From the IMG/VR virus record IMGVR_UViG_3300008954_003475, positions 157,879 to 221,878 of that record: a stretch of 64,000 bases of DNA; one strand, given 5' to 3'. The translations under genes were made by a program, and so were the position numbers. Every line of letters starts with the position of its first letter. The stretch's first letter is position 1. This document shows positions 18,224-63,206 of this stretch, piece by piece. The notes below the pieces were generated by a model. The model was not told the origin of the DNA. It did no database searches and saw only the letters and a list, made by a program, of their open reading frames with translations.

Positions 18224-18922
18224 CTATTTAGAATTACGGTAAGCGGCCACAGAGATAGGCCATAAATCTGTGGCTATATCCAGACAAGCTTTAGCCACCT
18301 GCTGAATCTCCCACTGTGCCCCTTCATGCGTCCTAAGATCAATAAACTTCAAAAGATTATTAAGATTTGTTGTCCCATAATACTCAGTATACATATTCTG
18401 CGGAAGAACCCCTCTAGCCTGCTCTCTGCAAACGCCAGCTTCAATCAGCCTGTTATATAGCTTAATACTTATATCATTGTGCAGCCTAACAGCCTCCGAC
18501 GCGACCTGCGCTGAATATGTATCTCTCGGATAGCTAACCAACGGATTGATGAGGTCACTCTCAACACTTGCCTGCCTATTTGATTTATGCTGTGTTCTGA
18601 ATTCTTTTGGCTCATAAAATTTAATATTTATATTGGTATACCTTCTGGATATCTCATTAAATGACCAAGTTCTGTGTCTATGATGTTGGCTGCGAATAAA
18701 CAAAGGAACACGAAAACGAAAGGTAACAACATTATGTTCTAAGGTAGAAGTATGTTTGTTCTTAATCAAGTAACCAATAAGCTTCTCGTCCTTAGCGTCA
18801 AGTGTATTCTTTTGTTCTCCAAAAGAAACCCTTGCGCTGTTTACAACAGTAAGGTCGCTACCCATATAATCAACAAGCTCTACCTTGCCAATCCCATCAT
18901 TATACAGATCAATCCTCGCCAC
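18224..18922 (-). CDS. thyX: FAD-dependent thymidylate synthase ThyX
   Basis: VVNSARVSF, HTSTLEH, RSQHHRHRTWSFNEISRRY, REQARGVLP. Confidence 0.95.
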   Translation of the reverse strand: MARIDLYNDGIGKVELVDYMGSDLTVVNSARVSFGEQKNTLDAKDEKLIGYLIKNKHTSTLEHNVVTFRFRVPLFIRSQHHRHRTWSFNEISRRYTNINIKFYEPKEFRTQHKSNRQASVESDLINPLVSYPRDTYSAQVASEAVRLHNDISIKLYNRLIEAGVCREQARGVLPQNMYTEYYGTTNLNNLLKFIDLRTHEGAQWEIQQVAKACLDIATDLWPISVAAYRNSK

Positions 18923-20120
18923 GCTCTCCCCTTCCGGTACAGGTCAAGAACAACTGTCGTTGTTCATCAAACATAATATTTGCAGCCTCCGTAACGTCTT
19001 TCGCCGTTACACTTTCCAGACTCTTCATATAATCCTCTATATCTGGGAGGCCAAAAAGCTTTCGCTTAACCGCCCAATAACAAAGACTATAGCTATCTTC
19101 CATGGCAGAATAAAATGATGATCTCATTTTATTTTTGGCTCGCTGCACTTCTTCTTCCGTTGGTAATTCTATTTTAATCCTAGACAACTCGGTGTCCACA
19201 GTTTCAACTGCTTCCTGAACATTGTCTTGTCTTGTTGATAGCTCTATCAAACTTAATGCTCCATGCTGCCAATCGTTATAAGCCGTAGACACTCCATACA
19301 CTAAGCCGCGCTTCTCCCTGACCTCTGTGAACAGCCTACAGTCCATCCCTCGTCCCATAATGGTCATAAGCACCTGTATAGCCCCCTCATGTTCAGAGGC
19401 TGTGTTTGCCGCTGGCATACCCATCCATACATAAGTATGTTCTATACCATCCTTTGCAAGCTCTAAATATCTGCTTTCATCATAAGTCGTATCTTTAAAA
19501 TTATATGATCTCTTTATTTTTCCATTTGGCTTTCCAAAATATTTTCTAAGCAATTCCTTTGATTGCTTTTTATTTAAATTACTACAAAGAGAAACAACAG
19601 CATCTTTTCTTTGACAGAATTGAGAATGGAATCTTCTTACTTCATCACAAGTAAACTCTTCAATGCTTTCTTGAGTTCCAATAACAGGTATCTGAATATA
19701 ATTATCAAAGAAGTTCTTTGAAAAGTTTTGCCAAATAAACATCATTGGATCATCACCTGATGAAATCTCTTCCTCCTTAACTACTTCTTTTTCCTTTAAA
19801 AACTCTTCCTCTGGAAAGATTGGATTGAAAACCATATCAGAAAGAATTTCTATACAGGGTTCTAGATTTTCATACGGAACGGTTATGTAATATGCAACAG
19901 ATTCATGTGAAGTAAAAGCATTTGAATGACCTCCAAGAAAAGCTATCTCTCTTTGCAGTTGCACACTGTCTCTTTTCGCTGTGCCTTTAAACAAAGAATG
20001 CTCAAGCATATGGGCCATGCCTGAGCTATATCCGCCAATGGGTTCAACTCTTGAACCAGCATTGAAAGCAACCATTATCGTTGCTAATCTACTATGTGTC
20101 TTAGAGGTTACATGAATCAT
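18909..20120 (-). CDS. M16-family (pitrilysin/insulinase) zinc peptidase
   Basis: AHMLEHSLFKGT (HxxEH), NAFTSHE, LFTEVREKRGLVY; start moved to MIHVTS because a terminator lies at 20139-20173. Confidence 0.9.
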   Translation of the reverse strand: MIHVTSKTHSRLATIMVAFNAGSRVEPIGGYSSGMAHMLEHSLFKGTAKRDSVQLQREIAFLGGHSNAFTSHESVAYYITVPYENLEPCIEILSDMVFNPIFPEEEFLKEKEVVKEEEISSGDDPMMFIWQNFSKNFFDNYIQIPVIGTQESIEEFTCDEVRRFHSQFCQRKDAVVSLCSNLNKKQSKELLRKYFGKPNGKIKRSYNFKDTTYDESRYLELAKDGIEHTYVWMGMPAANTASEHEGAIQVLMTIMGRGMDCRLFTEVREKRGLVYGVSTAYNDWQHGALSLIELSTRQDNVQEAVETVDTELSRIKIELPTEEEVQRAKNKMRSSFYSAMEDSYSLCYWAVKRKLFGLPDIEDYMKSLESVTAKDVTEAANIMFDEQRQLFLTCTGRGERGED

Positions 20121-20138
20121 TAACCGCCTCCTTAAGAT

Positions 20139-20173
20139 AAAAAAAGGGTGGAGACATTGTGTCTCCACCCTTT
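20139..20173 (-). terminator. Rho-independent terminator after the VWA gene
   Basis: AAAGGGTGGAGAC-5 nt-GTCTCCACCCTTT perfect stem followed by a T-run on the minus strand. Confidence 0.85.
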
Positions 20174-26476: not shown

Positions 26477-27308
26477 CAGTCACTCCAGTGTTTAATACAT
26501 TTAAATCAGCTACTCTAAAACCAGATGCATTCTTGTGTCCACCGCCACCAAACTCAGCAGCAATCACAGATACATCATCACCATCTTCTTTCGACCTAAG
26601 CGAAAACCTATAACTCTCTCCATCATAATAATACGCAGCAGCAAAAGGCTCTCCGTCTGCTAACTCTGATGCCATTTCTGATTGAAAAAATGGAGCGTTA
26701 ACAATGGGAACTTCTTTGCCTAAAATATTTGTTCTATAAGAATTTAACAAAAGAGATCTAATCAAGTTTCTCTTGTACTGCAAGATTCCTTCTCCCATAT
26801 TCTTTACGCGTTTCCATCTAATAGATTCTGCTGCATCTAAATAACTATGTAGCATATCCCAATTATCAAATGTTTTCTCGAAAGAATCTACGGCAGACAG
26901 CACTTCTTCTGTAAATGGAAGTTCCCACTTCCACAAGTCTCTATCTTCAACATACTGAATAAGGAGAGGAACATTATCATCTGGAAACAAATAATCCCAA
27001 GCCAAATATGCTCCAGAATGATTCATATCAAAATAACAAAACTCTAAATCTCCCGAATGTTCTTGAGCCGACTTATGATGATCTAACACAACAAGGCTGC
27101 TAGCCTCTTGTTCCATTTCCAGCATTATAGCCCTATCATATGAAAAGTCAACAATAAATACATCACGATCTTTAACGCAAGGTCTTTCCTCGCCATGAGT
27201 AACAGGGATATATTCAGCACTCGCTCCAAACTTTCGCCTAAAAGCCCATGCTGCACCGAATCCATCGGGACAATTAGCATGGTATAAAACCATTATTTTA
27301 TCTGACAT
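26451..27308 (-). CDS. DHH/DHHA1-family phosphoesterase
   Basis: YHANCPDG, VDFS, LDHHKS, EDRDLW, FSLRS, GGGGHKNASGF. Confidence 0.9.
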   Translation of the reverse strand: MSDKIMVLYHANCPDGFGAAWAFRRKFGASAEYIPVTHGEERPCVKDRDVFIVDFSYDRAIMLEMEQEASSLVVLDHHKSAQEHSGDLEFCYFDMNHSGAYLAWDYLFPDDNVPLLIQYVEDRDLWKWELPFTEEVLSAVDSFEKTFDNWDMLHSYLDAAESIRWKRVKNMGEGILQYKRNLIRSLLLNSYRTNILGKEVPIVNAPFFQSEMASELADGEPFAAAYYYDGESYRFSLRSKEDGDDVSVIAAEFGGGGHKNASGFRVADLNVLNTGVTDESNKNES

Positions 27309-28324
27309 TAAATTACCTCTGGTGAATACGAAAACTTAACATACTCTACAAGGGGTGAGTTGTTTCGTATTGTTGTTTCAACAAAGCTTATCATTTCGTC
27401 TAAGCTTAAGAACCTAACCAATCTTCCACCATAACTGAGCTTAAAATGCCCTAATTCATTTATTATATCACACTTACTTATAACAAGGTTTGTTGTCCCT
27501 GTTATGTTAACTGCTCTAATTAGCATATCCAGATTGAGCCAATTAACCTTTCTTCTTCTTCCGGTCGTGACTCCAAACTCTTGACCTAAATCTGTAAGAG
27601 CCTTTAACACAGGATCTTCAAGCAATCTATTTGGGAACCTTGGGTCCTCTCCGCTCTTTGTATCATAGATCTTTGCAACGCCCCAAACCTTATTAATCTT
27701 CTGAGTTGGAAAGCCTATGCTGCAAGCTCCATAAGGCAATGTGATACTTGATGTTACATAAGGATAAAGTCCATTATCAATATCAAGCCAAACACCTTGG
27801 GCTCCTTCACATAACAGATTGCCATTTAATTCTTCATTCCAAACAAAGTCTTTGTCTAAAACATCAACGGCAAGAGTTCCAACCCTTGCTGCTTTATCTG
27901 CATAACAAGGGGCTATGCCTCGACCTGTTGTGCCAAGCTTTGCTGCCAAATGTTCTTTATCAAAAGCTATATGTTCCTCTGTAACAATATGGCAATTTGG
28001 AGCCACCTTTACTAATGACGTATCAAAACCACTTTTTGATAAATAGTCAATCTCTTTATAAAAAGATTCTGGATTCAAAACACATCCTGGGCCTATAAGG
28101 GACTGAACTCCATGAAAAACTCCAGATGGAATCAAGTGAGTTTTGTACTTCTCTCCTTCTACGAATACGGTGTGTCCAGCATTATTTCCACCGCCCCAAC
28201 GGGCAACTATATCATAATAATTAGAACCATCTTCATTCTTTGTAGAAGCTAACTGACTGGTGACTTTTCCTTTAGATTCATCCCCCCAAGCTAGTCCTAC
28301 AACTATATCTGCTATATCAATCAT
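27308..28324 (-). CDS. purA: Adenylosuccinate synthetase (short form)
   Basis: GLAWGDESKGK, GGGNNAGHT, HLIPSG, EGAQG..LDID.G.YPYVTSS, EFGVTTGRRR. Confidence 0.93.
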   Translation of the reverse strand: MIDIADIVVGLAWGDESKGKVTSQLASTKNEDGSNYYDIVARWGGGNNAGHTVFVEGEKYKTHLIPSGVFHGVQSLIGPGCVLNPESFYKEIDYLSKSGFDTSLVKVAPNCHIVTEEHIAFDKEHLAAKLGTTGRGIAPCYADKAARVGTLAVDVLDKDFVWNEELNGNLLCEGAQGVWLDIDNGLYPYVTSSITLPYGACSIGFPTQKINKVWGVAKIYDTKSGEDPRFPNRLLEDPVLKALTDLGQEFGVTTGRRRKVNWLNLDMLIRAVNITGTTNLVISKCDIINELGHFKLSYGGRLVRFLSLDEMISFVETTIRNNSPLVEYVKFSYSPEVI

Positions 28325-28904
28325 CGCTATCCTCTTCGCTTCCATTAAGAATGTTTATAACCTTCTTAATTTTACTGGGACGGCGAAGAAAAGTAATACC
28401 CTCTTTATGAGTAGAAACAGTTGCTGTGAATGTAATCATTTCACCTACATTAAAGCTATGTGCCTTAGATGTTTTGAAATACCACTTCCAACCTCTTTCG
28501 TCAACACAGATGATAGCTGGCATAGGATATTCGGTATTCATCTTTGCTTCTGCAATCTTATAAATACCAAGCGGTCCAAGATCTAATCTTGCTCCAACCT
28601 CAACATCAGGCTCGTCTAACATGGTTGCTTTCACAATTGAGTCAACCCATCTATTGAGAGATCCAATCCACTTCTCAGTTAGTCTATGAGGATTTTCTGT
28701 AACAACAGAAATGCTTGATTTAAGAAACTCATTGTTTGGACTTTCTTGTAGCTTTACAGCAAGAAGGGGAATAACCATAGGGTTTAATTGCTCTAGGTTT
28801 TCTTGACCTACTCTGGCGGTATCAACCCCGCTCTTCTTGCGTCTATTGGTGGCAGACTTTCTGGACTTCTTTTTCTTTCGTCCATCACTAAAGATATTTA
28901 TCAT
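28317..28904 (-). CDS. Hypothetical phage protein with possible C-terminal OB-fold
   Basis: EFLKS...LTEKW helical motif; VGEMITFTATVSTHKEGITFLRRP. Confidence 0.6.
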   Translation of the reverse strand: MINIFSDGRKKKKSRKSATNRRKKSGVDTARVGQENLEQLNPMVIPLLAVKLQESPNNEFLKSSISVVTENPHRLTEKWIGSLNRWVDSIVKATMLDEPDVEVGARLDLGPLGIYKIAEAKMNTEYPMPAIICVDERGWKWYFKTSKAHSFNVGEMITFTATVSTHKEGITFLRRPSKIKKVINILNGSEEDSDD

Positions 28905-28977: not shown

Positions 28978-30486
28978 TTATAGCCTACGACTTGTACGAC
29001 TTGGCGGATATCCTGCTGCGGCTCTTTCTCGCGGAGTCATTCTTCTCCACTCTCTTTTTTGCTCCCTAGTCATATTATCCCAGTCTCTTCTTTGACCTCT
29101 TCTTGCCTCTTCTCTAAGATATCGCCGTTGTCTACGAGTTGTAGTACCTGAATCTCTAAGGTTGTTATTCACAGCAGATCTCTCTCTATCTGAAAAAGAA
29201 CTTCTCTGCTCCGGAATAAGCTGGCGTCTATAAGTAATAGGGATCCACAGCTTTGCGTCTACTGCTGCATTTCCAATCGGAGGTTTCGGATCTGTTGTAT
29301 TTTTCTTTTTATTGGTAAAGAAAAATACAGGAATCATTCTATTCTCTGCTGTATCATGAAATGCCCCTACGGAGCCATCCCTATCTCCGTTTGTCTTACC
29401 TTTAATCTCCGCTGCAGGATAGCCTCTAAAGCTACCACTCTGTCCCGCTTGTCCTGTCTGCCCTGCGCCACCAGACTCAGGCGTAAAGGTTGAAAGGGCA
29501 ATGCTGAAAGCACTTCCTGTATTGTCGTTATCATAAGCTGTTCTGACAGCAGCTTTGTTTGCGCCTCTTCCCAATACTGCAGTTGCAGTTGCTTTATCTA
29601 GAGGAAGATCTAATCCTGTTCCGTCAAATAATTTCGTTCTGGCCTCAAGAGGAAAGGACTCTGTTGCGGGGAACATGAGATAGCTTTCAAGCATCCTATC
29701 TCCATCTGTACCCTGTATCCCTCCGGTGTCCAGCCTTCCTGATAACATCCGTAAAGCTTCTTCTGCTGTTTCCGGAAGAGCACCCTTATCTGCTTTGGCC
29801 CAAGCCTGTTTAGATTTAGGTCCAAAATACCCATCGGGTACCAAATCTTTATCGCTATCATCTTTATACCCAAGCTCTTTAAGCTTCTCCTGAACAGCCT
29901 CTGCTGCATCTGATTTAAACAGCTTACCATCTTTCTTAAAAGGAGTAGCGGCCTGTGCAGCTTGTTGCTGACCGCCTTGCTGATCGCCTTGCTGATCGCC
30001 TTGCTGATCGCCTTGCTCCGAACTTCTACTGCTTAAGTGATGCCAGTCTCCAGGCCCGTCAGTCTTTTCATAAACAGCAGATGCCGCCGTGGAGCTCCAA
30101 CTCCCTTTAGGTAACTTTTTCCAGTCATAAAAGGAACCGCCACGGTTTCCTGCATTTAAACCCATGTAAATCCATCCTGACGGACCACCTGTACCTCCAT
30201 ATGCCTCTGCTTTGGCTTTGTCCCATTTCTCAACATCACCTCTGGTTAAACTATTTTCTGTATCAATGGTTAAAAGCTGCATCTTACCGGCTTGATTTCC
30301 CGTGCCTGCCCATACTGCATGTAGCTTTCCATCGGCCCCTTGCTTTACATGATAACTGTTGGGTTCTGGATCATCTTGTATACCCTTAGTAACAGCAGTC
30401 TTTACAAGCCCCTTTACAATCCTTGCCTGAGACTTGTAGCCTAACTTATAAAGCTCTTTAGCCAATGTGTTTAATTCATTATTCAT
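28978..30486 (-). CDS. Tag-family putative virion/ejection protein with peptidoglycan-binding-like domain and Arg-rich tail
   Basis: N-terminal ELNTLAKELYKLG...LVKTA; VQEKLKELGY..VPDGYFGPKSKQAW; GTGLDLPLD domain; Arg-rich C-terminus. Confidence 0.7.
   Translation of the reverse strand: MNNELNTLAKELYKLGYKSQARIVKGLVKTAVTKGIQDDPEPNSYHVKQGADGKLHAVWAGTGNQAGKMQLLTIDTENSLTRGDVEKWDKAKAEAYGGTGGPSGWIYMGLNAGNRGGSFYDWKKLPKGSWSSTAASAVYEKTDGPGDWHHLSSRSSEQGDQQGDQQGDQQGGQQQAAQAATPFKKDGKLFKSDAAEAVQEKLKELGYKDDSDKDLVPDGYFGPKSKQAWAKADKGALPETAEEALRMLSGRLDTGGIQGTDGDRMLESYLMFPATESFPLEARTKLFDGTGLDLPLDKATATAVLGRGANKAAVRTAYDNDNTGSAFSIALSTFTPESGGAGQTGQAGQSGSFRGYPAAEIKGKTNGDRDGSVGAFHDTAENRMIPVFFFTNKKKNTTDPKPPIGNAAVDAKLWIPITYRRQLIPEQRSSFSDRERSAVNNNLRDSGTTTRRQRRYLREEARRGQRRDWDNMTREQKREWRRMTPRERAAAGYPPSRTSRRL
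29974..30017. repeat. 12-bp tandem repeat encoding QQGD
   Basis: GCCTTGCTGATC x3 plus a partial copy. Confidence 0.85.
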
Positions 30487-30508
30487 TATTTATATCACCC
30501 TATTGATT

Positions 30509-32833
30509 TTAGCTTGGATTCTTTCCGCGCCACTGTTGTCTACGAGCATCTCTTGCGGCTCTATTGCGCTGTTGTATAGTTGTTTGCAGTGGCCCCGTTT
30601 GATTTTTCATAGCCTTTCTAACAGCTCGTCGTTCTTGATCTGTATGATAAGGAAGACCTTGTGCAAGCTGCTGTCTAAAGCGTACAGGCACCCACTTTCC
30701 TTCATAATTAAATAAAGGCTCATATCGTGTTGAGTTTGCCGGAAGATGTGTTGCCACAGTTCCCGCTCCTGCTCCGGAAACTCTCTCGGCAGGAATAACA
30801 GGAACATCGCCTGCTTGACCGCCGAGACCACCACCGAGTCCACCGCCGTCACCTCCGAGGTCTAACGGAGTACTAAATGCGGATAATGCAAAGTCAAGTC
30901 TTCCTTCTGCATTGTCTTTGTCATAAGCTTCTTCTACAGCCGTCTTGTTTGTTCCCTTGCCCAATACAGCAGCTGCGGTACCTGGATCCAAAGGAAGGTC
31001 CAAACCTGTTCCTTGAAACAATGCTGCTCTAGCCGGAAGATCTGCCTCTCCACTATATATAAGATACTTAGAAAGAGGCTTCTCTTCTCCGGTTTGTGCG
31101 GCTCCTCCAGCTTCGGCTGTATCGGAAGATCCACCGGCAGTTCTTTCTTCACTCTTACCTTCATCAAGTGCTTTTAAGGCCAAACCAGGAGATGATGGTC
31201 GGCCTCCTTTGTTTGCTTTGTTCCAAGCCTGTTGAGATTTTGTTCCCCAATCATTATCAATGTCTAACCTGTTTCCATCATCGTCTGTGAAACCAAGGTC
31301 ATTAAGCCTTCTTTGAACATCACCTATTGCAGAGTTACCCGCCGACCAACCGCTGGGAGATGATCCTGATCTTCTTGATGTTCCCGGGTCTGTTCCTGCT
31401 CCTGTTCCCGGGTCTGTTCCTGCTCCTGCAGAACCATCAGCAACTATTACCCAGCTACCGTCTTCCTTATCCGCAACACCAAAGCCAGGAACATCAGCCA
31501 TCATACTCTTGTATTGGCTGGCTGCTGACCAACCATCCATTTTTCTATATTCTGGATAAGCATGGTCGGTGTCTGGAAATCCATTTACCGGAATGCTATC
31601 AGATGAAGACGCGTTATTTACCTCATCGCTTACCCAGGTATCGGTTGCGCTATATCTCTTCGATGTCCACCTCGCATTACCTGTTAACTGTTTGTTAAAC
31701 ACAATACGGTGTAAATCGCCTCCGATGATTCGCCATCTAATGGGATTTGAACCCCATTCTTGATCAAGAGCATACTCACTTACTCCAGCGGCGACCCGTT
31801 CCTCCACAGTTGCTGCCTCAGAAACCGTCCCAGCAGCCGCATGTGCTGCGGCTTGTTCGGCAACTTGTCTGTCATTTTCTCTTACAAAGTCATCCCAATT
31901 TGTCTTGGCACGGTCGGCGGCTCGGGCAGCATCATCCTTGAAGGCACTTGAAGCTCCACTCAACATTATTGATTTAAACCAACTGCCGCTGGAATGGCCC
32001 GGCGTATAGGAGATCGCTGGCTCTTTCGTCGCCCCAGTGTCAAGCAGGCTCTCAGGGAGTCCTTCGCGGTAGTCGTCGGCGGCGAATGCGGCCCACACCG
32101 CTCTAGCAACCGCTGCTGCTTGCTCCTCATCACCCCCTGAATAAAAGTTCACGGTTGCCATTCTGTCGATTGCGTTAGTATATTCCTCAAGAGCTTTACC
32201 CAGCTTGTTCTGGCCTACGCTTCCATCCGAGGTGTAATTCCATGGAGCAGCAGTCTTTACAAGCCTCAAAGTCTCATTTGCTTGTTTTTCATACCCAGAC
32301 TTTCTCAAGGCTGTTGCAAGTTTGGTTAATTCTTTTTGTTCTGTATTCATAATGGTTCCTACCTTTGGTATCCTTCTTCTTTTTAATCTTCCAGTCTCCA
32401 AGAAACTAAAGTAATCTTCTGACTCAGTTTTAAACGGAATATTAATAGGTTTGGATCTTTCTCTTCTGTCAATATTAGATGGTGGTTTATCCTCATCAAT
32501 ATCAATAACCGATGGACCTCCAAAACCTGTGATAAATGATGCTTCAAAATCTTGCTGTTCGTAGCTAGACCTTGGTCTATAACCTTGCGCTCCGGGAGGA
32601 CTTCCGCCGGGAATGTCCGTTAAGCCCAAAGCTTGTTTGTGTATCTCTTGGAGTTTATTCTTTTTTGTCAACTTTTTGCCCTCGTCGGGTTCGTCGTCAG
32701 CATAATTATAAACTAACTCATGTGGATGAGAAGGAGTCCTTATAACATCCGGAGTCCTCTCTTTTATTACCGGTCCAGATTCATAATACGAAATTAAATC
32801 AAGGAGAGATAAACCCCTCTTCTTTTTTTTCAT
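30509..32833 (-). CDS. Tag-family putative virion/ejection protein with peptidoglycan-binding-like domain (possible internal start at 32350)
   Basis: Internal ELTKLATALRKSG...LVKTA; VQRRLNDLGF..IDNDWGTKSQQAW; GTGLDLPLD domain; basic tail. Confidence 0.7.
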   Translation of the reverse strand: MKKKKRGLSLLDLISYYESGPVIKERTPDVIRTPSHPHELVYNYADDEPDEGKKLTKKNKLQEIHKQALGLTDIPGGSPPGAQGYRPRSSYEQQDFEASFITGFGGPSVIDIDEDKPPSNIDRRERSKPINIPFKTESEDYFSFLETGRLKRRRIPKVGTIMNTEQKELTKLATALRKSGYEKQANETLRLVKTAAPWNYTSDGSVGQNKLGKALEEYTNAIDRMATVNFYSGGDEEQAAAVARAVWAAFAADDYREGLPESLLDTGATKEPAISYTPGHSSGSWFKSIMLSGASSAFKDDAARAADRAKTNWDDFVRENDRQVAEQAAAHAAAGTVSEAATVEERVAAGVSEYALDQEWGSNPIRWRIIGGDLHRIVFNKQLTGNARWTSKRYSATDTWVSDEVNNASSSDSIPVNGFPDTDHAYPEYRKMDGWSAASQYKSMMADVPGFGVADKEDGSWVIVADGSAGAGTDPGTGAGTDPGTSRRSGSSPSGWSAGNSAIGDVQRRLNDLGFTDDDGNRLDIDNDWGTKSQQAWNKANKGGRPSSPGLALKALDEGKSEERTAGGSSDTAEAGGAAQTGEEKPLSKYLIYSGEADLPARAALFQGTGLDLPLDPGTAAAVLGKGTNKTAVEEAYDKDNAEGRLDFALSAFSTPLDLGGDGGGLGGGLGGQAGDVPVIPAERVSGAGAGTVATHLPANSTRYEPLFNYEGKWVPVRFRQQLAQGLPYHTDQERRAVRKAMKNQTGPLQTTIQQRNRAARDARRQQWRGKNPS
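31380..31427. repeat. 24-bp direct repeat x2 encoding GAGTDPGT
   Basis: GTTCCCGGGTCTGTTCCTGCTCCT occurs twice in tandem. Confidence 0.85.
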
Positions 32834-32834
32834 A

Positions 32835-33962
32835 CTATCTCCTTACTAGGGGTGCTTCTCCGTTACTGAATATTCCAGAAAGAAGATCTGCCGCTTTCTC
32901 TATTCTGTCAAACTGTGCGTTAGCAACCGAATCAAAGGCTGCATCTTCATCAAAATCAATATCTTCATGCTGAACTCTAAAGGCGTCCTCTCTTGTTCGA
33001 CGCTCTCTGGCTTGTGCTATTCCACTATCTACATCTGTTAACAAAGCTAAAGCATCTTTTGGATTAGAAGGAAGAGCGCCCTTCCCTGCTTTAGCCCAAG
33101 CCTGCTTAGATCTTCTTCCAAAATCATTATCTGTTGCTAACTCTTTCTCTTCATTATCTGTATGCCCTAGCTCATTAAGTCTGACTTGAACATGCTCCCA
33201 TGTTGCGACCTCTGGCGTTTGAGCAGCACCTCCAGTCTCTCCTGTTCCAGACTGCGCTAAAGCAGTTCCTTGCGGAAGTTCTTTGCCCATTCTTTGAGCA
33301 TAATTCTGAATCTCACTCCAGTGACTAGCGAGATCTGGACTGGTTCTGATCCTCTCCTGATGCTCTTCGTCTCCCGATATATAAGAATCATACCATGACT
33401 TTGCTACCGCCCCAACATCAGAAGAACCTCCCGATGTTCCGCGACTTGTACCTGCCGACTCCATCCAATCAACAGTGTATTGAAGCATTCCTGCCATATC
33501 TCCTTCTTGTGGGTTTTCCTTTCCTGGGTAACCGGCCTTTGGTCCTAAAGATTTCCAATTTCGTGCTAAGTCGTCTCTTCCTATATGAGAAGTAAACGAC
33601 TCCCATCCTTTTTGCAAATCTCTACTCCATTTTGGATTCGACAAAGAAACCTCTACAAGATTAGCTTCATCAAACTGGGCCCATTTACCTTCTTTTGCTT
33701 TATCAAAAAAGAATTTCAAAATAGCTCTAAACACATTTACTCTATCACCTGTAGATAAATTTGCAGCGGTATCTGCCGCCGTCTTCAAGGCGCGAATAGC
33801 AGGCCTGAAGTTATCACCAACCTCTTCTTCATAATGCTCCCGATCCTCTTCTTCCGCCACTTCTTCCTGGGCAGTCTTTAAAAGATTGTCCAGCCTATCA
33901 GCTAGGTCTCTGTGACCAATGCTGTCTAAGTGATTTGCTAATTTAACTAATTCTTTTTGCAT
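32835..33962 (-). CDS. Tag-family protein with peptidoglycan-binding-like domain and conserved C-cap
   Basis: MQKELVKLANHLDSIGHRDLADRLDNLLKTA; VQVRLNELGH..TDNDFGRRSKQAW; DRIEKAADLLS. Confidence 0.75.
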   Translation of the reverse strand: MQKELVKLANHLDSIGHRDLADRLDNLLKTAQEEVAEEEDREHYEEEVGDNFRPAIRALKTAADTAANLSTGDRVNVFRAILKFFFDKAKEGKWAQFDEANLVEVSLSNPKWSRDLQKGWESFTSHIGRDDLARNWKSLGPKAGYPGKENPQEGDMAGMLQYTVDWMESAGTSRGTSGGSSDVGAVAKSWYDSYISGDEEHQERIRTSPDLASHWSEIQNYAQRMGKELPQGTALAQSGTGETGGAAQTPEVATWEHVQVRLNELGHTDNEEKELATDNDFGRRSKQAWAKAGKGALPSNPKDALALLTDVDSGIAQARERRTREDAFRVQHEDIDFDEDAAFDSVANAQFDRIEKAADLLSGIFSNGEAPLVRR

Positions 33963-33976
33963 TTTAATATCCTTAT

Positions 33977-34534
33977 TTATCTAGAAAAGGTGCCTGGAAC
34001 GTATGTTGTAAATTCACGCGACATTAACTCTGCTAACTTATCAATTCTTTCCTGTGCAGAATTGGCTGCAAAAACTTGATCAAAAGCTTCATCGCTATCG
34101 AGGACACCCTGCTCTTCCAATCGAGCTTCTCTGTCAGCATTGTAGGCCTCAAGAATCTCCTCTTTCGTACCAGTTTGTGCCGATGTTTCTTCAGGAACAG
34201 GTGGAGGCTCATCAGATGCTACCTGCCCCTCGGCATCCTCACCATATTGATTTACGTCTGGTTCGGCATAACCGCCGGGGTTTGGGTCTCGTTCAAGCGA
34301 AACTGAATCAAGATTCTTTTGTGCGATCCATGAATTTCTCAATCGTTGATTCCATGTCCCATCATCTTCACCCTCGTGCCGAGGATACTGCAGCTTTAAA
34401 TCCTCGATCTCTTCGGCAGTAGGAGCTACTGCACTACTTTGCGCACTCTTTAAAATTACATCCAACTTATCAGCCAAGTCTCCATGCCCGATGTTGTCTA
34501 AGTGATTTGCTAATTTAACTAATTCTTTTTTCAT
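33977..34534 (-). CDS. Tag-family acidic protein with conserved C-cap
   Basis: MKKELVKLANHLDNIGHGDLADKLDVILKSA; ERIDKLAELMSREFTT. Confidence 0.75.
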   Translation of the reverse strand: MKKELVKLANHLDNIGHGDLADKLDVILKSAQSSAVAPTAEEIEDLKLQYPRHEGEDDGTWNQRLRNSWIAQKNLDSVSLERDPNPGGYAEPDVNQYGEDAEGQVASDEPPPVPEETSAQTGTKEEILEAYNADREARLEEQGVLDSDEAFDQVFAANSAQERIDKLAELMSREFTTYVPGTFSR

Positions 34535-34548
34535 TTTAATTTCTCCAA

Positions 34549-35502
34549 TTATCTTCTGAAAACTCCCGTAACATTAGTTGTAAATTCACGAGACATTAAC
34601 TCTGCTAACTTATTGATTCTATCATGAACCGATTCTGAAGCTTCCTTCTCTACTTCAGGATCAATAGGGCTAAACTCTACATCTAATTCTTCATCAGAAG
34701 AGCCTTCAGAGTCCTGCCAGCCACCAGTGTCACCACCTTCTGATCTCAACCTCTCTAAAATTTTATCCTTCAACTCTACCATTCTCATTATAAAGCTAGG
34801 GCCTTTTGGTTCTTTTCCGGCATCGGCAAACTCTTTGGCCGCCGCTCCTCTCGCCTCATCTTGAGCCTGTCTATCAAGAGCTTTGTCATCCGCACTCTTT
34901 GTCAAACTTAAAGAATCACTTCCCTCTTTTTTATTCAAGATACCATCAAGCCTATCGGCCAAGTCTCTGTGACCTATGTTGTCCAAATGATTTGCTAATT
35001 TAACTAGCTCACTTTGCATTTTATAGCTTCCTTTAGATCCCAGTTTGATAACATTATCAATACGATTCTTTTTATTAGTAGTATTTTTTGAAGCTTCTAA
35101 CTGCAATCTTTGATTGATCATTCCCTCTGCCGCTCTCTCTGCCGCTTCTGCAACACCTTCGCCGCCTGGAAACTCTCCTTTCTCTGCATCAAAATCTTCT
35201 ATATGACCATATTCATGAACCAAAGTTTTTGCTATTTGAGCTACCAAATACTTTATTTCTTCATCAGTAGCGTTTGGAGGAAACTTGTTTATAACAAAGT
35301 GTATCTTATCTATCTTCCCATCATTGTTTACATCTTCGGAAGAAACATAAGCTGCGGCGTTTGGATCGCCGGAAGCAGGTGCCGGACCCCATTCGCACTT
35401 ATTGCTATTCAACATAGACATTATCTCGGGCTTTAAACCAAGAGTTTGAAGACCCTGTTTGACCTTCGGCCAATATGGAGGTTGCGCTGTTTTCTTCAAC
35501 AT
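34549..35502 (-). CDS. HExxH metallopeptidase-like domain fused to a tag-family module
   Basis: MLKKTA; LVHEYGH followed by EGVAEAAE; internal MQSELVKLANHLDNIGHRDLADRLD; C-cap DRINKLAELMSREFTT. Confidence 0.7.
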   Translation of the reverse strand: MLKKTAQPPYWPKVKQGLQTLGLKPEIMSMLNSNKCEWGPAPASGDPNAAAYVSSEDVNNDGKIDKIHFVINKFPPNATDEEIKYLVAQIAKTLVHEYGHIEDFDAEKGEFPGGEGVAEAAERAAEGMINQRLQLEASKNTTNKKNRIDNVIKLGSKGSYKMQSELVKLANHLDNIGHRDLADRLDGILNKKEGSDSLSLTKSADDKALDRQAQDEARGAAAKEFADAGKEPKGPSFIMRMVELKDKILERLRSEGGDTGGWQDSEGSSDEELDVEFSPIDPEVEKEASESVHDRINKLAELMSREFTTNVTGVFRR

Positions 35503-40775: not shown

Positions 40776-42380
40776 TTACGAGTTATCGTTAGTGATCGAT
40801 TCATATATTGCAACTTCCGTAGTTAACAACGTGCCACTAGCTGATGCTGCATTTTCCAAAGCTGATCTCACAACTTTTACTGGATCAATAATTCCGCTCT
40901 TTAACATATCATCAACATAACAATCATTAAAGGCATCGTATCCACTAAACATTTTTTTAGAATTGATTATTTTTTCCATATAAGAAAAGTGTTCAATTCC
41001 AGCATTTGTTAAAATCTGAACAAAAGGTGCCCGTATTGATTTCATTATTACATCAACACCAATCAACTCTTCTGTAATAAGAGAGGTATCATTTTTTAAT
41101 TTTTGCAATACAGGAATACAATGCAAAAGAGCCGCACCGCCGCCGGGGACTATACCCTCTTCTACAGCAGCCTTAACAGCGTTTATAGCATCTTCCACTC
41201 GATCCTTCCTTTCTTTTACCTCTGCCTCTGAAATACCACCGACTTTAAACACGGCCACAGAACCAGATAGTGCTGACAACCTTTGCTTTATAGAGGCTAT
41301 CTCATAAGTCTCAAGGCTCTGCTCCAGCTGTACCCTTAGAGTCTTAATGCGTTCATCTATCTCATCTTGAGGACAAACCCCATCTATGATAGTTGTATCG
41401 GCTCTTGTGACAAGCACTCTTCTTGCAGTACCTAAATGCTCAACAGATATATTTCTTAGTGGACAACCTGCTTCATTAGTAAATAAAGTTGTTCCACAAA
41501 CCGTTGCAATATCTGAAAGCATACCTCTTCTTATATCTCCGAACCCTGGCGCTCTTACGGCACAGGAGTGTAATGCTCCACGCGCCTTGTTAAGAACAAG
41601 GGTCTGCAAAGCCTCCCCTTCAGTAGTCTGAGATATAACCAACAGGGGTCTTGCCTGTTCTGAAACTGCTTCTAATATAGGAAGTATATCATATGTATTA
41701 GATATCCTTCCATCATAAACCAAAATTAATGGATTATCAAACTCTACAGTAAGCTTTTCTAGATTTGTAGCAAACGTGGGCGTTATATATCCTTTATCAA
41801 AGGTCATACCTTCCGTATATACTACAGCTGTTTCAAAGCCTGGAGCATCTTCTACAGATATCATTCCATGATCTCCAACAGCCGAAACAGCTTCTCCAAT
41901 AGTTGTGCCAAGACCTACATCATTATTTGAAGATACAATCGCTACATTCCTTATAGTCTCTTCATCATCAACAGACTTGCTAATATCCTTTAACTTTTTA
42001 ACAACTGTATTAACAGCTTTGTCTATCCCTCTTTTGATCAAGACCGGATTGTGACCAGCTGCAACCATTTTAGCCCCCTCTGTAAAAATAGATTGAGCTA
42101 AAACAGTTGCAGTGGTTGTTCCGTCACCTGCCGATGCATTTGTGGACGAAGCTACACTCTTAATGAGTTCTGCCCCCATGCTATGCATCTTATCCTCTAG
42201 AGTTATAGATCTAGCGACTGTAACTCCATCCTTGGTAATGAGTGGTGGGCCAAAGCTTCTTTCTATAGCTGCATGACGCCCCTTCGGTCCAAGCGTTGCC
42301 TTCACAGCATTAGCCAATACATCAAGCCCATCTTTAAGACCATTTCTTGCATCAGCGCTAAACTTAACTTCCTTGCCCAC
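40776..42380 (-). CDS. groEL: GroEL-like chaperonin
   Basis: [53 protein letters not shown]; lacks the GGM tail. Confidence 0.95.
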
Positions 42381-47570: not shown

Positions 47571-48014
47571 TCAAGTGTTCATATCGACTATTTTATATAC
47601 TCTTCCAAATTTAGAAAACTTCTTTCCATTAGAAATAAGTTCTGCCAAACTTAATAAGAAAGCTCCTTCTTCTTCTTTATATCTCTGACTGCTTACTTTT
47701 CTAACACTCTCCAGCTCTTCTGTCTTTTCTTTCCATATCTTTAAGAAATCAGCTGGAGAGTCTCCGGTCAAAGACTTAAAATATTTATCATAATCAGACA
47801 AAGTTGCTGCGCTATTACCCTCTTTTGCAGACCACTCTTTATCTGATTCTAAAACTTTTTTACTTTTAGATATAGAGGATACTACCATAGATTCGTCTGA
47901 CCTCAAAGACTCAGAAAGAACCCATCCAAAAGAAGTTGTATCGCCAACGCTTTCTTCATGATAAGAATAAAGCTTGTTGATCTTATACTTTTTTATAAAA
48001 TCATCCACCTTCAT
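47571..48014 (-). CDS. Hypothetical protein
   Basis: ORF; start set at MKVDD, overlapping the glnII stop. Confidence 0.6.
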   Translation of the reverse strand: MKVDDFIKKYKINKLYSYHEESVGDTTSFGWVLSESLRSDESMVVSSISKSKKVLESDKEWSAKEGNSAATLSDYDKYFKSLTGDSPADFLKIWKEKTEELESVRKVSSQRYKEEEGAFLLSLAELISNGKKFSKFGRVYKIVDMNT

Positions 48015-49083
48015 TCGTCTCTTCGGCTTTAACCTCATTAACAGGACAAACAGCCTCAACCAAGGTTGTTACAACGCGATAGGGGTCAGCATTACTGTTG
48101 GGCCTTCTATCCTCAAAGTAACCACGACCCTGTCTGTCAACTAACCACGGAATCCTAATGGACGCACCACGATCTGAAACTCCATATCTAAACTCTGATA
48201 TGTCACAAGTCTCATGCTTTCCAGTAAGCCTTCTGTCCAAGCCTTCTCCGTAAGTTGCCTTTGCTCTATCTACATTAGCAGTTTCAGACAAAGTTTCGCA
48301 GGCTGCAACGATATGTTCTACACCACCCTCTGCTCTCATTTGTAAAGTGCTAAAGTTTGTATGTAACCCGCTTCCGTTCCAGTCACCACTTACCGGCTTT
48401 GGATCCAACGTAACCTCTACTCTCTGAGATTCTGCAACTCTATGCAGCAGAAATCTTGTTAGCCATAAATGATCACATGCAGCAACAGCATTTACATTTG
48501 GACCACCAACCTGATACTCCCACTGGCCCAAAGCTACTTCTGCATTTATACCAACAATTGATAATCCAGAGTTAATACATGAACTCAAATGAACTTCCGC
48601 AACGTCTCTGCCAGCAACTTTACCCTCTCCAACTGCACAATAATAAGGACCCTGTGCTTCTGGATCAGTTGTTCCAGCAGGCCAGCCCAAAGGTCTGCCC
48701 TCTCTCCATAAGAAATACTCTTGCTCAAAGCCAACCGCTGGCAGGCTATCTCCATGCTTCAACATAGCATCAATTAGTCTAGCTCTATAATTAGACTCAT
48801 GAGGAGTTAAATCTGTATTTAACACATCACATAAAATCAAAACACCACTTGGTCGATTAGAGTCTACGCAAGCAAAGACTGGCCTTAAAACACAGTCTGA
48901 ATTTACAGTTGTTGCCTGACCTGTACTTGAACCATCAAAACCCCATACTGGAAAGTCTGACAAGTTTAGCTGCCAATTTTCATCTTCTGAATTTACAGTT
49001 ATAACCCTGGTCTTTGACCTAAGCTGTGGAGTTTCGCCACCATCTAACCATATATATTCGCATCGTAATGTTGCTGTTCCCAT
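48001..49083 (-). CDS. glnII: Glutamine synthetase type II
   Basis: EYIWLDG, WGFDGSSTGQA, GFEQEY, INAEVALGQWEYQVG, DWNGSGLHTNFST, RLTGKHET, RGASIRIP, YFEDRRP. Confidence 0.95.
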   Translation of the reverse strand: MGTATLRCEYIWLDGGETPQLRSKTRVITVNSEDENWQLNLSDFPVWGFDGSSTGQATTVNSDCVLRPVFACVDSNRPSGVLILCDVLNTDLTPHESNYRARLIDAMLKHGDSLPAVGFEQEYFLWREGRPLGWPAGTTDPEAQGPYYCAVGEGKVAGRDVAEVHLSSCINSGLSIVGINAEVALGQWEYQVGGPNVNAVAACDHLWLTRFLLHRVAESQRVEVTLDPKPVSGDWNGSGLHTNFSTLQMRAEGGVEHIVAACETLSETANVDRAKATYGEGLDRRLTGKHETCDISEFRYGVSDRGASIRIPWLVDRQGRGYFEDRRPNSNADPYRVVTTLVEAVCPVNEVKAEETNEGG

Positions 49084-62494: not shown

Positions 62495-62716
62495 TTATCT
62501 TGCAGAATTTATATCATATTTGTTATACAAATCATTTTTACCAATAATGCTTCCACTGTAATCTGGGTTTACTACCTTTCTGTTGTTCCAATAAATTGTT
62601 TCAACAACATACTTTTCTATATCTGGATAATAAGTCAAAACACGGTGTCCGTAATCTTTATCGTCTAAAGCACGAACTTCTTTCCCAGCCAAACTATCTG
62701 AATCAAACATTATCAC
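62495..62716 (-). CDS. Hypothetical protein
   Basis: 73-aa ORF. Confidence 0.55.
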   Translation of the reverse strand: MIMFDSDSLAGKEVRALDDKDYGHRVLTYYPDIEKYVVETIYWNNRKVVNPDYSGSIIGKNDLYNKYDINSAR

Positions 62717-63206
62717 ACCCTTCTATGATAAGTAAATCAATTTCATCGGCAGCTTTGATATGTCCCATCGAATCTAAATAATTAGAAAGTTTTATAAGGC
62801 TGTGCTTAACCTTTGAAGTAATATCGTTAGGCCGGGAAGAACTATCTTTATTACCCAGAAGAATTGCATGATCTTCTTTTATTCTGGTCAATATTTCGCA
62901 AGGAACGCCAGCCTCTTCAAACCACTTTACTTCACGCTTGCTATGTGCAAGCATTTCTTTTTCCGGAAACCCTTTTTCTTCAAGTTCTTTATGCTCTTTT
63001 AAAAGTTTCTTTTTAATTTTATCGGAAAGAAAAGGAACCGCCTCTTCTTTTTCAAATTCAAAATGACATTCGGGGCAACATGAAGTTTCCTCTTTCGCCT
63101 GTTTTTTTTCGCTGCATGATTCACATGCGGCTTTATTTAAAGAATCAACACTCCAGGTGTATGGTTCGTTCAAATAGGTTGCAAGATTTGTAATTCTATC
63201 AGTCAT
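62703..63206 (-). CDS. Cys/His-containing protein with C-terminal tag-family motif
   Basis: CESC, CCPECH, EH..HSKRE..EDH; SLIKLSNYLDSMGHIKAADEIDLL. Confidence 0.7.
   Translation of the reverse strand: MTDRITNLATYLNEPYTWSVDSLNKAACESCSEKKQAKEETSCCPECHFEFEKEEAVPFLSDKIKKKLLKEHKELEEKGFPEKEMLAHSKREVKWFEEAGVPCEILTRIKEDHAILLGNKDSSSRPNDITSKVKHSLIKLSNYLDSMGHIKAADEIDLLIIEGCDNV

What the first reader, a model, noticed from the sequence alone, without database searches (positions are those of the whole stretch)
29750..33200. Three tandem tag proteins each carry a divergent peptidoglycan-binding-like three-helix domain
Seen: VQEKLKELGY..VPDGYFGPKSKQAWAKADKGALP (~29750-29905), VQRRLNDLGF..IDNDWGTKSQQAWNKANKGGRP (~31165-31325) and VQVRLNELGH..TDNDFGRRSKQAWAKAGKGALP (~33045-33200). 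Established: PG_binding_1 domains have the pattern vQ..L..lGy...vDG.fGp.T..A and usually accompany lytic catalytic domains. No lytic domain is recognisable in these three proteins. Inference: non-catalytic PG anchors that act during genome injection, e.g. holding an ejection channel in the periplasm, or repurposed domains.
Basis: partly seen in the sequence, partly recalled or inferred. Interest (0 to 1): 0.6.

Follow-up and report, generated by a model that had tools for sequence, protein, structure and literature searches.

The report
Murein-binding modules in phage tag proteins
Three neighbouring genes of an uncultured marine jumbo phage each carry a genuine but off-threshold cell-wall (peptidoglycan) binding domain and no wall-cutting enzyme, inside a hypervariable array of proteins with shared end tags; they are probably wall anchors delivered from the virion, but that is untested.

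Summary
Three about 75-aa segments lie on the minus strand at window 29707-29934, 31133-31354 and 33006-33230. They are 38-43% identical and are the only copies in the 222-kb genome. They are true PG_binding_1 (PF01471) domains, although Pfam's cut-off is missed (22.5 bits, 12.7 bits, no hit; cut-off 23).

- A profile of six family copies finds 458 proteins among 1.84 billion. Of the 70 best, 65 carry PG_binding_1.
- hhalign against the matched stretches gives 99.1% probability.
- AlphaFold predicts three helices, and the 11 nearest of 48,161 PDB chains are all PG_binding_1 domains.
- No lytic domain was found in these proteins or in ten relatives' proteins.

The three proteins belong to five tandem genes that share a 32-aa helical-hairpin tag. 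The array is a hypervariable island in otherwise about 95% identical relatives. Similar arrays occur in 12 other IMG/VR viral contigs.

None of the five proteins has a signal peptide or a membrane segment. The genome also has a separate ordinary endolysin. The injection role is therefore plausible, by analogy with T4 internal proteins, but it is unproven. The domain identity is near certain. The mechanism has confidence of about 0.4.

The parts
29707..29934 (-). PG_binding_1 module of A502 (aa 185-260). Its core DG-x-FG-xx-S motif is the closest of the three copies to the canonical form.
   Evidence: Pfam PF01471 gives E = 1.3e-4 and 22.5 bits on the segment alone, against a cut-off of 23. The AlphaFold model has helices at 9-21, 39-48 and 57-68, with pLDDT 74.6. 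The top 11 PDB neighbours are all PG_binding_1 domains. HMM envelope.
31133..31354 (-). PG_binding_1 module of B774 (aa 494-567). The motif reads DN-x-WG-xx-S.
   Evidence: Pfam gives 12.7 bits, E = 0.15. The family HMM gives E = 2.8e-36. The orthologous module is present in P0024/L001, L018, L023 and P0111.
33006..33230 (-). PG_binding_1 module of C375 (aa 245-319). The motif reads DN-x-FG-xx-S.
   Evidence: No Pfam hit. It is 50% identical to copy A over 64 aa, E = 2e-19. In the full-length model only this part is confident (pLDDT 75-83), and it matches the SltB3 and L,D-transpeptidase PG-binding domains at Z 5.5 and 5.4. The orthologue P0003 lacks the module.
28978..30486 (-). A502 gene. 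It has an N-terminal tag (30391-30486), a Q/G/D-rich low-complexity linker (29944-30021), the PG module, a region of about 70 aa shared with B774, and an Arg/Lys-rich tail (28981-29160; 20 K+R in the last 60 aa).
30509..32833 (-). B774 gene. It has a conserved N-terminal region (32351-32833), an internal tag (32246-32341), a variable middle, the PG module, the region shared with A502, and a basic tail (30512-30691).
   Evidence: The N-terminal region is 92% identical at DNA level in L001 and L002 and is recognisable in L018-L025 and P0111.
32835..33962 (-). C375 gene. It has an N-terminal tag (33867-33962), a helical middle, the PG module, and a C-terminal motif that ends in RR (32838-32933).
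33977..34534 (-). D185, the minimal member of the array: a tag (34439-34534), an acidic linker and the C-terminal motif (33980-34075). It has no PG module.
34549..35502 (-). E317, the first gene of the array. It has an N-terminal zincin-like domain with HExxH (35203-35217), an internal tag (34924-35019) and the C-terminal motif (34552-34644). It has no PG module in this genome.
   Evidence: The HExxH and a downstream G-E are invariant in 5 homologues. The orthologue in L023 does carry a PG-like module.

Best explanation
The three segments are genuine, non-catalytic PG_binding_1 modules. They belong to a subtype with a long loop between helices 1 and 2, and the second half-site is degenerate. 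They sit as interchangeable cassettes in a tandem array of five paralogous phage proteins. Each protein is built as a conserved 32-aa helical-hairpin tag, a hypervariable middle, and a conserved C-terminal element. The host genome is an uncultured marine jumbo myovirus. The proteins are made in the cytoplasm without any export signal, so the most likely way for the module to meet murein is from outside. In that case the proteins are loaded into the virion, with the shared tag as the loading signal. They then leave with the DNA at infection, and the PG module tethers them, or the conduit they form, to the sacculus in the periplasm. Shown: the domain identity, its copy number, the absence of any recognisable lytic or export feature, the hypervariability of the array, and its conservation in related viral contigs. 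Inferred: virion packaging, ejection and murein binding.
For: Domain identity:
- Pfam E = 1.3e-4 for copy A.
- A six-copy profile finds 458 proteins at E <= 1e-3 among 1.84e9. Of the 70 best, 65 carry Pfam PG_binding_1, many together with lytic domains.
- 16 of 20 of the exact matched stretches hit PF01471 on their own.
- hhalign gives 99.1% probability, E = 1e-18.
- The predicted model is a three-helix bundle, and its 11 nearest of 48,161 PDB chains are all PG_binding_1 domains: AP3 endolysin Z 5.0, SltB3, SleB-N, 1lbu, two L,D-transpeptidases, CtpB, SleC, phiKZ gp144 and others.

Non-catalytic:
- Searches found no lytic domain.
- The genome has its own Amidase_2 + PG_binding_1 endolysin elsewhere.

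Delivery from outside:
- There is no signal peptide or membrane segment. The maximum 19-aa hydropathy is below 0.8 in all five proteins.
- The proteins are largely low-confidence, helical or low-complexity.
- The flanks are about 95% identical in L001 and L002. Inside the array only the tags, the C-terminal motifs, the B774 N-terminus and the PG module keep DNA similarity.
- Arrays of 2-6 tagged genes occur in 12 IMG/VR contigs, with the PG module present or absent.
- T4 internal proteins are likewise highly diverse apart from a conserved capsid-targeting sequence (PMC3012670).
- Two B774 orthologues carry glycine-zipper membrane-like segments N-terminal to the PG module.
Against: - There is no proteomic or structural evidence that any of these proteins is in the virion.
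- The array lies about 55-70 kb from the terminase, portal, protease and capsid genes, among GroEL, purA and a DHH phosphoesterase.
- Copies B and C have lost the G of the DG motif. All copies have S for T, and all lack the second G...T half-site, so murein binding may be weakened or lost.
- No cultured phage carries the tag, so nothing is known experimentally about it.
- The one complex prediction that was tried gave no verdict.
Confidence: 0.4

Rival explanations
1. The fold has been repurposed. The three-helix bundle no longer binds murein and serves as a protein-protein or structural module inside the virion or the cytoplasm. The PG_binding_1-fold pro-domain of matrix metalloproteinases is a precedent.
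For: - Copies B and C read DN instead of DG. All copies have S for T and have lost the second G...T half-site.
- Pfam matches only profile positions 3-33 of 57, and hhalign aligns only columns 8-56.
- MMP pro-domains appear among the weaker structural neighbours at Z 2.4-2.6.
- A zincin-like protein (E317) heads the array.
Against: - Hydrophobic-core and motif positions are conserved across diverged copies. Some family members keep the canonical DG-x-FG-xx-T, for example P0065 and P0111.
- A502, B774, C375 and D185 contain no cysteine, so an MMP-like cysteine switch is impossible.
- The nearest sequence relatives are modules of bona fide wall hydrolases.
Confidence: 0.25
2. The proteins act at the lysis stage. 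They stay in the cytoplasm until holin lesions form. They then bind the sacculus as non-catalytic helpers or competitors of the endolysin, or they tether progeny or debris.
For: The lack of an export signal fits holin-dependent access, as for canonical endolysins. The phage's own endolysin uses a PG_binding_1 module too.
Against: - The array is not next to the endolysin, which lies about 165 kb away.
- Hypervariability between near-identical genomes is more typical of conflict or entry proteins than of lysis accessories.
- The tags, the basic tails and the zincin partner are not explained by this reading.
Confidence: 0.15
3. The modules bind a soluble or lipid-linked wall precursor, such as a UDP-MurNAc-peptide or lipid II stem peptide, on the cytoplasmic side. 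In this way they slow or sense host wall synthesis.
For: Only the cytoplasmic location at synthesis, and the fact that PG_binding_1 modules recognise parts of the muropeptide (established knowledge, not tested here).
Against: There is no precedent for this. Three copies in proteins with disordered linkers and basic tails are not explained by it. No evidence from any search points this way.
Confidence: 0.05

Closest known systems
PG_binding_1 (PF01471) modules of wall hydrolases, e.g. Burkholderia phage AP3 endolysin (5nm7), phiKZ gp144 (3bkh), SleB N-domain (6tci), Streptomyces Zn DD-peptidase (1lbu)
   Same: The predicted fold is the same three-helix bundle, and these are its top structural neighbours. 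Sequence profiles match reciprocally. The V-Q...L-N-x-L-G...D-G-x-F-G-xx-T/S...A pattern is shared.
   Different: No catalytic domain is attached. The Pfam score is under the cut-off. In copies B and C the DG is replaced by DN. The second G...T half-site is lost and the end of helix 2 is shortened.
T4-type internal proteins (IPI, IPII, IPIII and relatives) with a capsid-targeting sequence
   Same: A short conserved terminal tag sits on otherwise highly diverse proteins, and the locus varies between close relatives (PMC3012670).
   Different: There is no sequence relation. Here the tag is a 32-aa helical hairpin, and in two members it is internal. There is also a C-terminal motif. Packaging and cleavage are unproven, and the T4 internal proteins are not known to carry PG-binding modules.
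Xanthomonas-type T4SS effectors (X-Tfes): PG_binding_1 + lytic domain + C-terminal XVIPCD delivery domain
   Same: They are modular delivered proteins that combine a PG_binding_1 module with a conserved terminal delivery element. Ten of the 70 best profile hits are of this kind, and they recur in the Atlas structure lists.
   Different: Those effectors carry a wall-degrading domain and are secreted by bacteria. The phage proteins have neither a lytic domain nor an XVIPCD domain.
Encapsulin cargo targeting peptides (e.g. Myxococcus xanthus ...LTVGSLRR)
   Same: C375, D185 and E317 end in a short hydrophobic-G/S-x-F/V-R/S-R C-terminus. This resembles the peptides that bind the inner face of HK97-fold shells (PMC10960027).
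   Different: This is only a resemblance of a few residues. A502 and B774 lack the terminal form. The predicted complex of the C375 C-terminus with the phage major head protein gave no verdict.

Membership tests
PG_binding_1 (PF01471) | Significant match to the family HMM. Pfam's curated cut-off is 23 bits. | tested here: inconclusive
   Copy A scores 22.5 bits, E = 1.3e-4: significant by E-value but 0.5 bit under the cut-off. Copy B scores 12.7 bits, E = 0.15. Copy C has no hit. The match covers only profile positions 3-33 of 57.
PG_binding_1 (PF01471) | Reciprocal profile homology to accepted members | tested here: met
   The six-copy profile finds 458 proteins at E <= 1e-3. Of the 70 best, 65 carry PF01471. 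16 of 20 of the matched stretches hit PF01471 on their own, best E = 3.8e-19. hhalign gives 99.1% probability, E = 1e-18. Caveat: the comparison set was chosen by the query profile itself.
PG_binding_1 (PF01471) | Three-helix bundle fold | tested here: met
   This rests on a predicted model only. The AlphaFold model has pLDDT 74.6 and helices at 9-21, 39-48 and 57-68. Ranks 1-11 of 48,161 PDB chains are PG_binding_1 domains, Z 5.0-3.8. Foldseek's best rows were TtsA and SleB-N but were not significant. The module is again the only confident part of full-length C375.
PG_binding_1 (PF01471) | Typical (not strictly defining) signature D-G-x-F-G-xx-T and a second G...T half-site before helix 3 | tested here: inconclusive
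   The first signature is kept in A (with S for T) and reads DN-x-F/W-G-xx-S in B and C. The second half-site is absent in all three. Family members P0065 and P0111 keep the canonical first signature.
PG_binding_1 (PF01471) | Binds peptidoglycan | not testable with these tools
   This needs a sacculus pull-down or muropeptide binding with purified modules.
Virion-associated peptidoglycan hydrolases / endolysins | A muralytic catalytic domain (lysozyme, transglycosylase, amidase or peptidase) | tested here: not met
   None was found by Pfam, PHROGs or PDB sequence search in A502, B774 or C375. None was found in the C375 model or in ten relatives' tagged proteins. Large parts of the proteins are modelled at low confidence, so a very divergent fold is not excluded.
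Capsid-targeted internal (ejection) proteins, T4 type | A short conserved targeting peptide on otherwise diverse proteins, in a locus that varies between close relatives | tested here: met
   The tag is shared by five tandem ORFs and, more weakly, by three others in the genome. Flanks are about 95% identical in relatives while the middles are scrambled. Arrays occur in 12 further contigs. This is an analogy only, with no sequence homology to the T4 targeting sequence.
Capsid-targeted internal (ejection) proteins, T4 type | Presence in the mature head and release on infection; processing by the prohead protease | not testable with these tools
   There is no cultured relative. The complex prediction gave no verdict.

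The most novel reading that the evidence does not exclude
The five-gene array is a cargo-cassette system of uncultured marine jumbo phages. A conserved helical-hairpin tag, with or without a C-terminal peptide ending in RR, loads hypervariable payloads into the capsid for co-injection. The PG_binding_1 module is one exchangeable payload part that fixes the ejected proteins to the host sacculus. This would be a second, independently evolved counterpart of the T4 capsid-targeting system, and it would have an envelope-anchoring function not described for internal proteins.
Probability: 0.3. Interest if true: 0.7.

Novelty: new variant of a known kind. Interest (0 to 1): 0.42.

Why it matters
The domain itself is ordinary. 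What is unusual is its setting: three copies, no enzyme, no export signal, inside a hypervariable array of tagged proteins. The array is conserved in a cosmopolitan group of uncultured marine jumbo phages.

If the proteins are ejected, they would show how large myoviruses fix their ejection machinery or effectors to the cell wall. The tag would then be a usable capsid-loading signal.

If they are not ejected, a cytoplasmic phage protein family with murein-binding modules needs another explanation. The case also shows that Pfam's cut-off misses a whole phage subfamily of PG_binding_1.

Tried and rejected
- DNA (blastn) and protein (tblastn) searches of the 50,697-record phage collection with the array, B774, E317 and D185 gave nothing usable.
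- The word-based protein search with A502 was swamped, probably by its low-complexity words, and returned nothing.
- A scan of IMG/VR with the A502/B774 C-terminal alignment found no relatives.
- A three-copy profile against PDB sequences returned only chance-level rows and no PG-binding protein.
- Foldseek against PDB gave only non-significant rows.
- PHROGs gave no family for any of the five proteins at E < 0.01.
- Phmmer of A502 and B774 against PDB was blank.
It counts neither for nor against binding.
- A literature search for the tag core found only unrelated papers.
- One search for PG-binding domains in ejection proteins found a single defence-system paper, which I did not follow up.
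I did not resend the letters and obtained the coordinates from the stored HMMs and files instead.
- An MMP-like cysteine-switch latency with the neighbouring zincin was considered and rejected, because four of the five proteins have no cysteine.
Only genetic code 11 was used.
Full report
**Setting**

The window is the last 64 kb of a single 221,878-bp IMG/VR virus record. The record is linear, and CheckV rates it 66% complete. Nearly all genes lie on the minus strand.

The genome encodes these recognisable genes:
- large terminase, portal, a head-maturation protease domain inside an 1,150-aa ORF, a major head protein and a tail sheath, so it is a myovirus;
- two GroEL genes, a family-B-like DNA polymerase, UvsX, SbcC, purA, a DHH phosphoesterase, an M16 peptidase and a glutamine-synthetase-like protein;
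- a TubZ-like tubulin next to an Amidase_2 + PG_binding_1 endolysin.

No record in the 50,697-record phage collection (INPHARED, phage records from GenBank) resembles the region at DNA or protein level. The DNA is held by marine and seawater metagenomes from several studies. Near relatives come from TARA Oceans and JGI marine samples.

**The observation**

The three quoted peptides are present on the minus strand:
- A502 (28978-30486), aa 198-238;
- B774 (30509-32833), aa 506-546;
- C375 (32835-33962), aa 258-298.

In window coordinates these are 29773-29895, 31196-31318 and 33069-33191. The conserved segment is longer than the quoted peptides, about 75 aa (29707-29934, 31133-31354, 33006-33230). 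The copies are 38-43% identical over the whole segment. Copies A and C are 50% identical over the core 64 aa, BLASTP E = 2e-19. An HMM of the three copies finds nothing else in the six-frame translation of the genome; the next hit has E about 8.

**Is it a PG_binding_1 domain?**

Pfam alone is borderline. Copy A scores 22.5 bits (E = 1.3e-4) against a cut-off of 23. Copy B scores 12.7 bits, and copy C has no hit. The match covers only the first 33 of 57 profile positions. A three-copy profile found no PG-binding protein in PDB sequences.

Four further tests settle the question.

1. I added three metagenomic copies from orthologues (P0002, P0024, P0004) and searched 1.84 billion representative proteins with the six-copy profile. 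This gave 458 hits at E <= 1e-3 and 46 at E <= 1e-10. Many hits have 2-10 matched stretches, as expected for tandem PG_binding_1 repeats.
2. Of the 70 best hits, 65 carry Pfam PG_binding_1 (best E = 1e-205). They often also carry M23, Amidase_3, Glucosaminidase, NlpC/P60, CHAP or SLT domains, or the XVIPCD delivery domain. When only the matched 71-aa stretches of 20 such proteins are scanned, 16 hit PF01471 on their own. The profile therefore lands on the PG_binding_1 module itself.
3. hhalign of the phage-family profile against those 20 stretches gives 99.1% probability, E = 1e-18, with 45% identity of the consensus over 49 columns. The comparison set was picked by the query profile, so this figure is not independent of test 1. 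The Pfam scans are independent.
4. AlphaFold2 on the three-copy alignment gives a three-helix model (helices 9-21, 39-48, 57-68; mean pLDDT 74.6). In an exhaustive comparison with 48,161 PDB representatives, ranks 1-11 are all PG_binding_1 modules: AP3 endolysin, SltB3, SleB-N, Zn DD-peptidase 1lbu, 4xxt, 5tv7, two L,D-transpeptidases, CtpB, SleC and phiKZ gp144. Their Z values are 5.0-3.8 with 59-69 aligned residues. These Z values are low in absolute terms, as is usual for a 60-residue domain. The argument rests on the clean enrichment.

In the full-length C375 model the module is again the only confident part, and it again matches the SltB3 and L,D-transpeptidase modules. The ESM Atlas lists for A502 and B774 are filled with PG_binding_1 clusters, though at scores that are leads only.

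The consensus of the retrieved proteins shows a subtype with a long helix 1-helix 2 loop, L-N-x-L-G-Y-x-D-xx-G-x-x-L-xx-D-G-x-F-G-xx-T. The phage copies share this subtype, and it explains why the general Pfam model under-scores them. The phage copies differ from it in three ways:
- DN replaces DG in copies B and C;
- S replaces T;
- the end of helix 2 is shortened and the second G...T half-site is lost.

**No enzyme**

None of the tests below found a muralytic domain:
- Pfam and PHROGs on the five proteins;
- PDB sequence search with A502 and B774;
- the C375 model, which is all-helical with mean pLDDT 53 and gives no hydrolase match;
- ten tagged proteins of related contigs.

The Atlas's own models of A502 and B774 are poor (pLDDT 0.38 and 0.40). 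Much of these proteins is low-complexity or unpredictable, so a very divergent fold cannot be excluded. The phage has a separate, ordinary endolysin about 165 kb away.

**The surrounding array**

A502, B774 and C375 are the last three of five tightly packed genes. The spacers are 1-22 nt, and the first gene overlaps the upstream 1,094-aa ORF by 7 nt. All five share a 32-aa motif predicted as a helical hairpin. It is N-terminal in A502, C375 and D185, and starts at about residue 162-165 in B774 and E317.

C375, D185 and E317 also share a C-terminal helix plus a short tail that ends in R-R or S-R. This motif is found nowhere else in the genome.

A502 and B774 instead share a region of about 70 aa after the PG module, and both have Arg/Lys-rich tails. 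E317 begins with a zincin-like domain whose HExxH and a downstream G-E are invariant in five homologues. The N-terminal 160 aa of B774 is a conserved region seen in most relatives.

Weaker tag copies occur in three other ORFs of the genome. One of them lies directly upstream of the large terminase gene.

**Variation**

Two related contigs (L001 from TARA, L002/L003 from JGI) are about 95% identical to the window from GroEL down to the middle of E317. Inside the array, DNA similarity survives only in islands: the tags and C-terminal motifs (about 92%), the N-terminus of B774 (about 92%) and the PG module (about 76%). The C375 orthologue in L002 lacks the PG module. The one in L001 has a variant of the module right after the tag.

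Twelve further IMG/VR contigs carry arrays of one to six tagged ORFs, usually headed by the zincin-tag gene. The PG module appears in some B774-like genes (L018, L023) and once in the zincin-tag gene (L023). The module is therefore a mobile cassette within a hypervariable, tag-delimited array.

**How it probably works**

None of the five proteins has a signal peptide or a hydrophobic segment. The maximum 19-residue hydropathy is 0.73 or less, and four of the five have no cysteine. A murein-binding module made in the cytoplasm can reach murein in only two ways: after the inner membrane is breached at lysis, or by delivery from outside.

A short conserved tag, a hypervariable payload and variation between near-identical genomes together describe the T-even internal proteins. 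Those proteins share only a capsid-targeting sequence and are injected with the DNA (PMC3012670). The C-terminal tails also resemble encapsulin targeting peptides, which bind the inside of HK97-fold shells (PMC10960027). Two B774 orthologues carry glycine-zipper, membrane-like segments N-terminal to the PG module.

I therefore favour packaged, ejected proteins whose PG module anchors them in the periplasm. My confidence is only about 0.4. The array is not in the structural module, no virion data exist, and the motif changes could mean a repurposed fold.

The rivals are a repurposed protein-interaction module (0.25), a lysis-stage role (0.15) and binding of cytoplasmic wall precursors (0.05).

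Two short contigs of a seawater metatranscriptome lie on B774 (30958-31141 and 31749-31913, one mismatch each). This hints at transcription but does not prove it, because DNA can be present in RNA libraries.

**Verdict**

The statement that no lytic domain is present holds as far as it was tested. The injection role remains a reasonable but unproven inference.

As a domain this is a new subfamily of a known family. As an architecture (tag + PG_binding_1, no enzyme, hypervariable array) it is a new variant. Interest is moderate.

Noticed in passing
window 28978-35502 (minus strand); also G000:C1 132420-132929, 138062-139162 and window 62703-63206: A 32-aa helical-hairpin tag (L-V-K-L-A-N-H-L-D-x-x-G-H-x-D-L-A-D-x-L-D type) is shared by five tandem genes. 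It occurs more weakly in three other ORFs, one of them directly upstream of the large terminase gene. Many metagenomic proteins match only this tag at 70-87% identity.
   Followed up: partly
window 32838-32933, 33980-34075, 34552-34644: A conserved C-terminal helix plus a tail ending in R-R or S-R occurs in C375, D185 and E317 only. It is reminiscent of encapsulin cargo-targeting peptides. A complex prediction with the major head protein gave no verdict.
   Followed up: partly
window 28978-35000 compared with L001 and L002: The array is a hypervariable island. The flanks are about 95% identical in relatives, while inside the array only the tags, the C-terminal motifs, the B774 N-terminus and the PG module keep DNA similarity.
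   Followed up: yes
window 35020-35502 (E317 N-terminal domain; HExxH at 35203-35217): This is a zincin-like metallopeptidase domain with an invariant HExxH and a downstream G-E. It is conserved at the head of the array in many related contigs. Pfam Zincin_1 matches only at E = 0.15.
   Followed up: partly
window 32351-32833 (B774 aa 1-161): This N-terminal region, which precedes the internal tag, is strongly conserved. It is 92% identical at DNA level in L001 and L002 and recognisable in L018-L025 and P0111. One gene caller started the orthologue P0026 at the tag's methionine instead.
   Followed up: partly
L018:11977-14094 and P0111: Two B774 orthologues contain a glycine-zipper, membrane-like segment (hydropathy 1.7-1.9) between the tag and the PG module. 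One of them has a weak Pfam C19orf12-like hit. B774 in this window has no such segment.
   Followed up: partly
window 28981-29160 and 30512-30691: A502 and B774 have Arg/Lys-rich C-terminal tails (20 and 14 K+R in the last 60 aa). These might bind nucleic acid.
   Followed up: no
G000:C1 21459-22397 and 22397-24871 (outside the window): A canonical endolysin (Amidase_2 + PG_binding_1, 25 bits) lies next to an ORF with Tubulin/FtsZ and TubZ-like C-terminal domains. The phage therefore encodes a tubulin.
   Followed up: partly
window 18909-20168; window 40776-42380 and G000:C1 144082-145737; window 48001-49083; window 27308-28345: The phage encodes an M16 (insulinase-type) peptidase, two GroEL genes, a glutamine-synthetase-like protein and an ORF that reads like adenylosuccinate synthetase (purA). 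The purA assignment was not scanned against any family library.
   Followed up: no
L007:1438-1569 (G000:C1 about 137924-138055): A 43-aa ORF lies just downstream of the ORF that carries two tag copies. It gives a weak match to the last third of PG_binding_1 (12.9 bits, E = 0.03), which is probably chance.
   Followed up: no
window 30958-31141 and 31749-31913: Two short contigs from a seawater metatranscriptome lie on B774, each with one mismatch. This is a hint of transcription, not proof.
   Followed up: no
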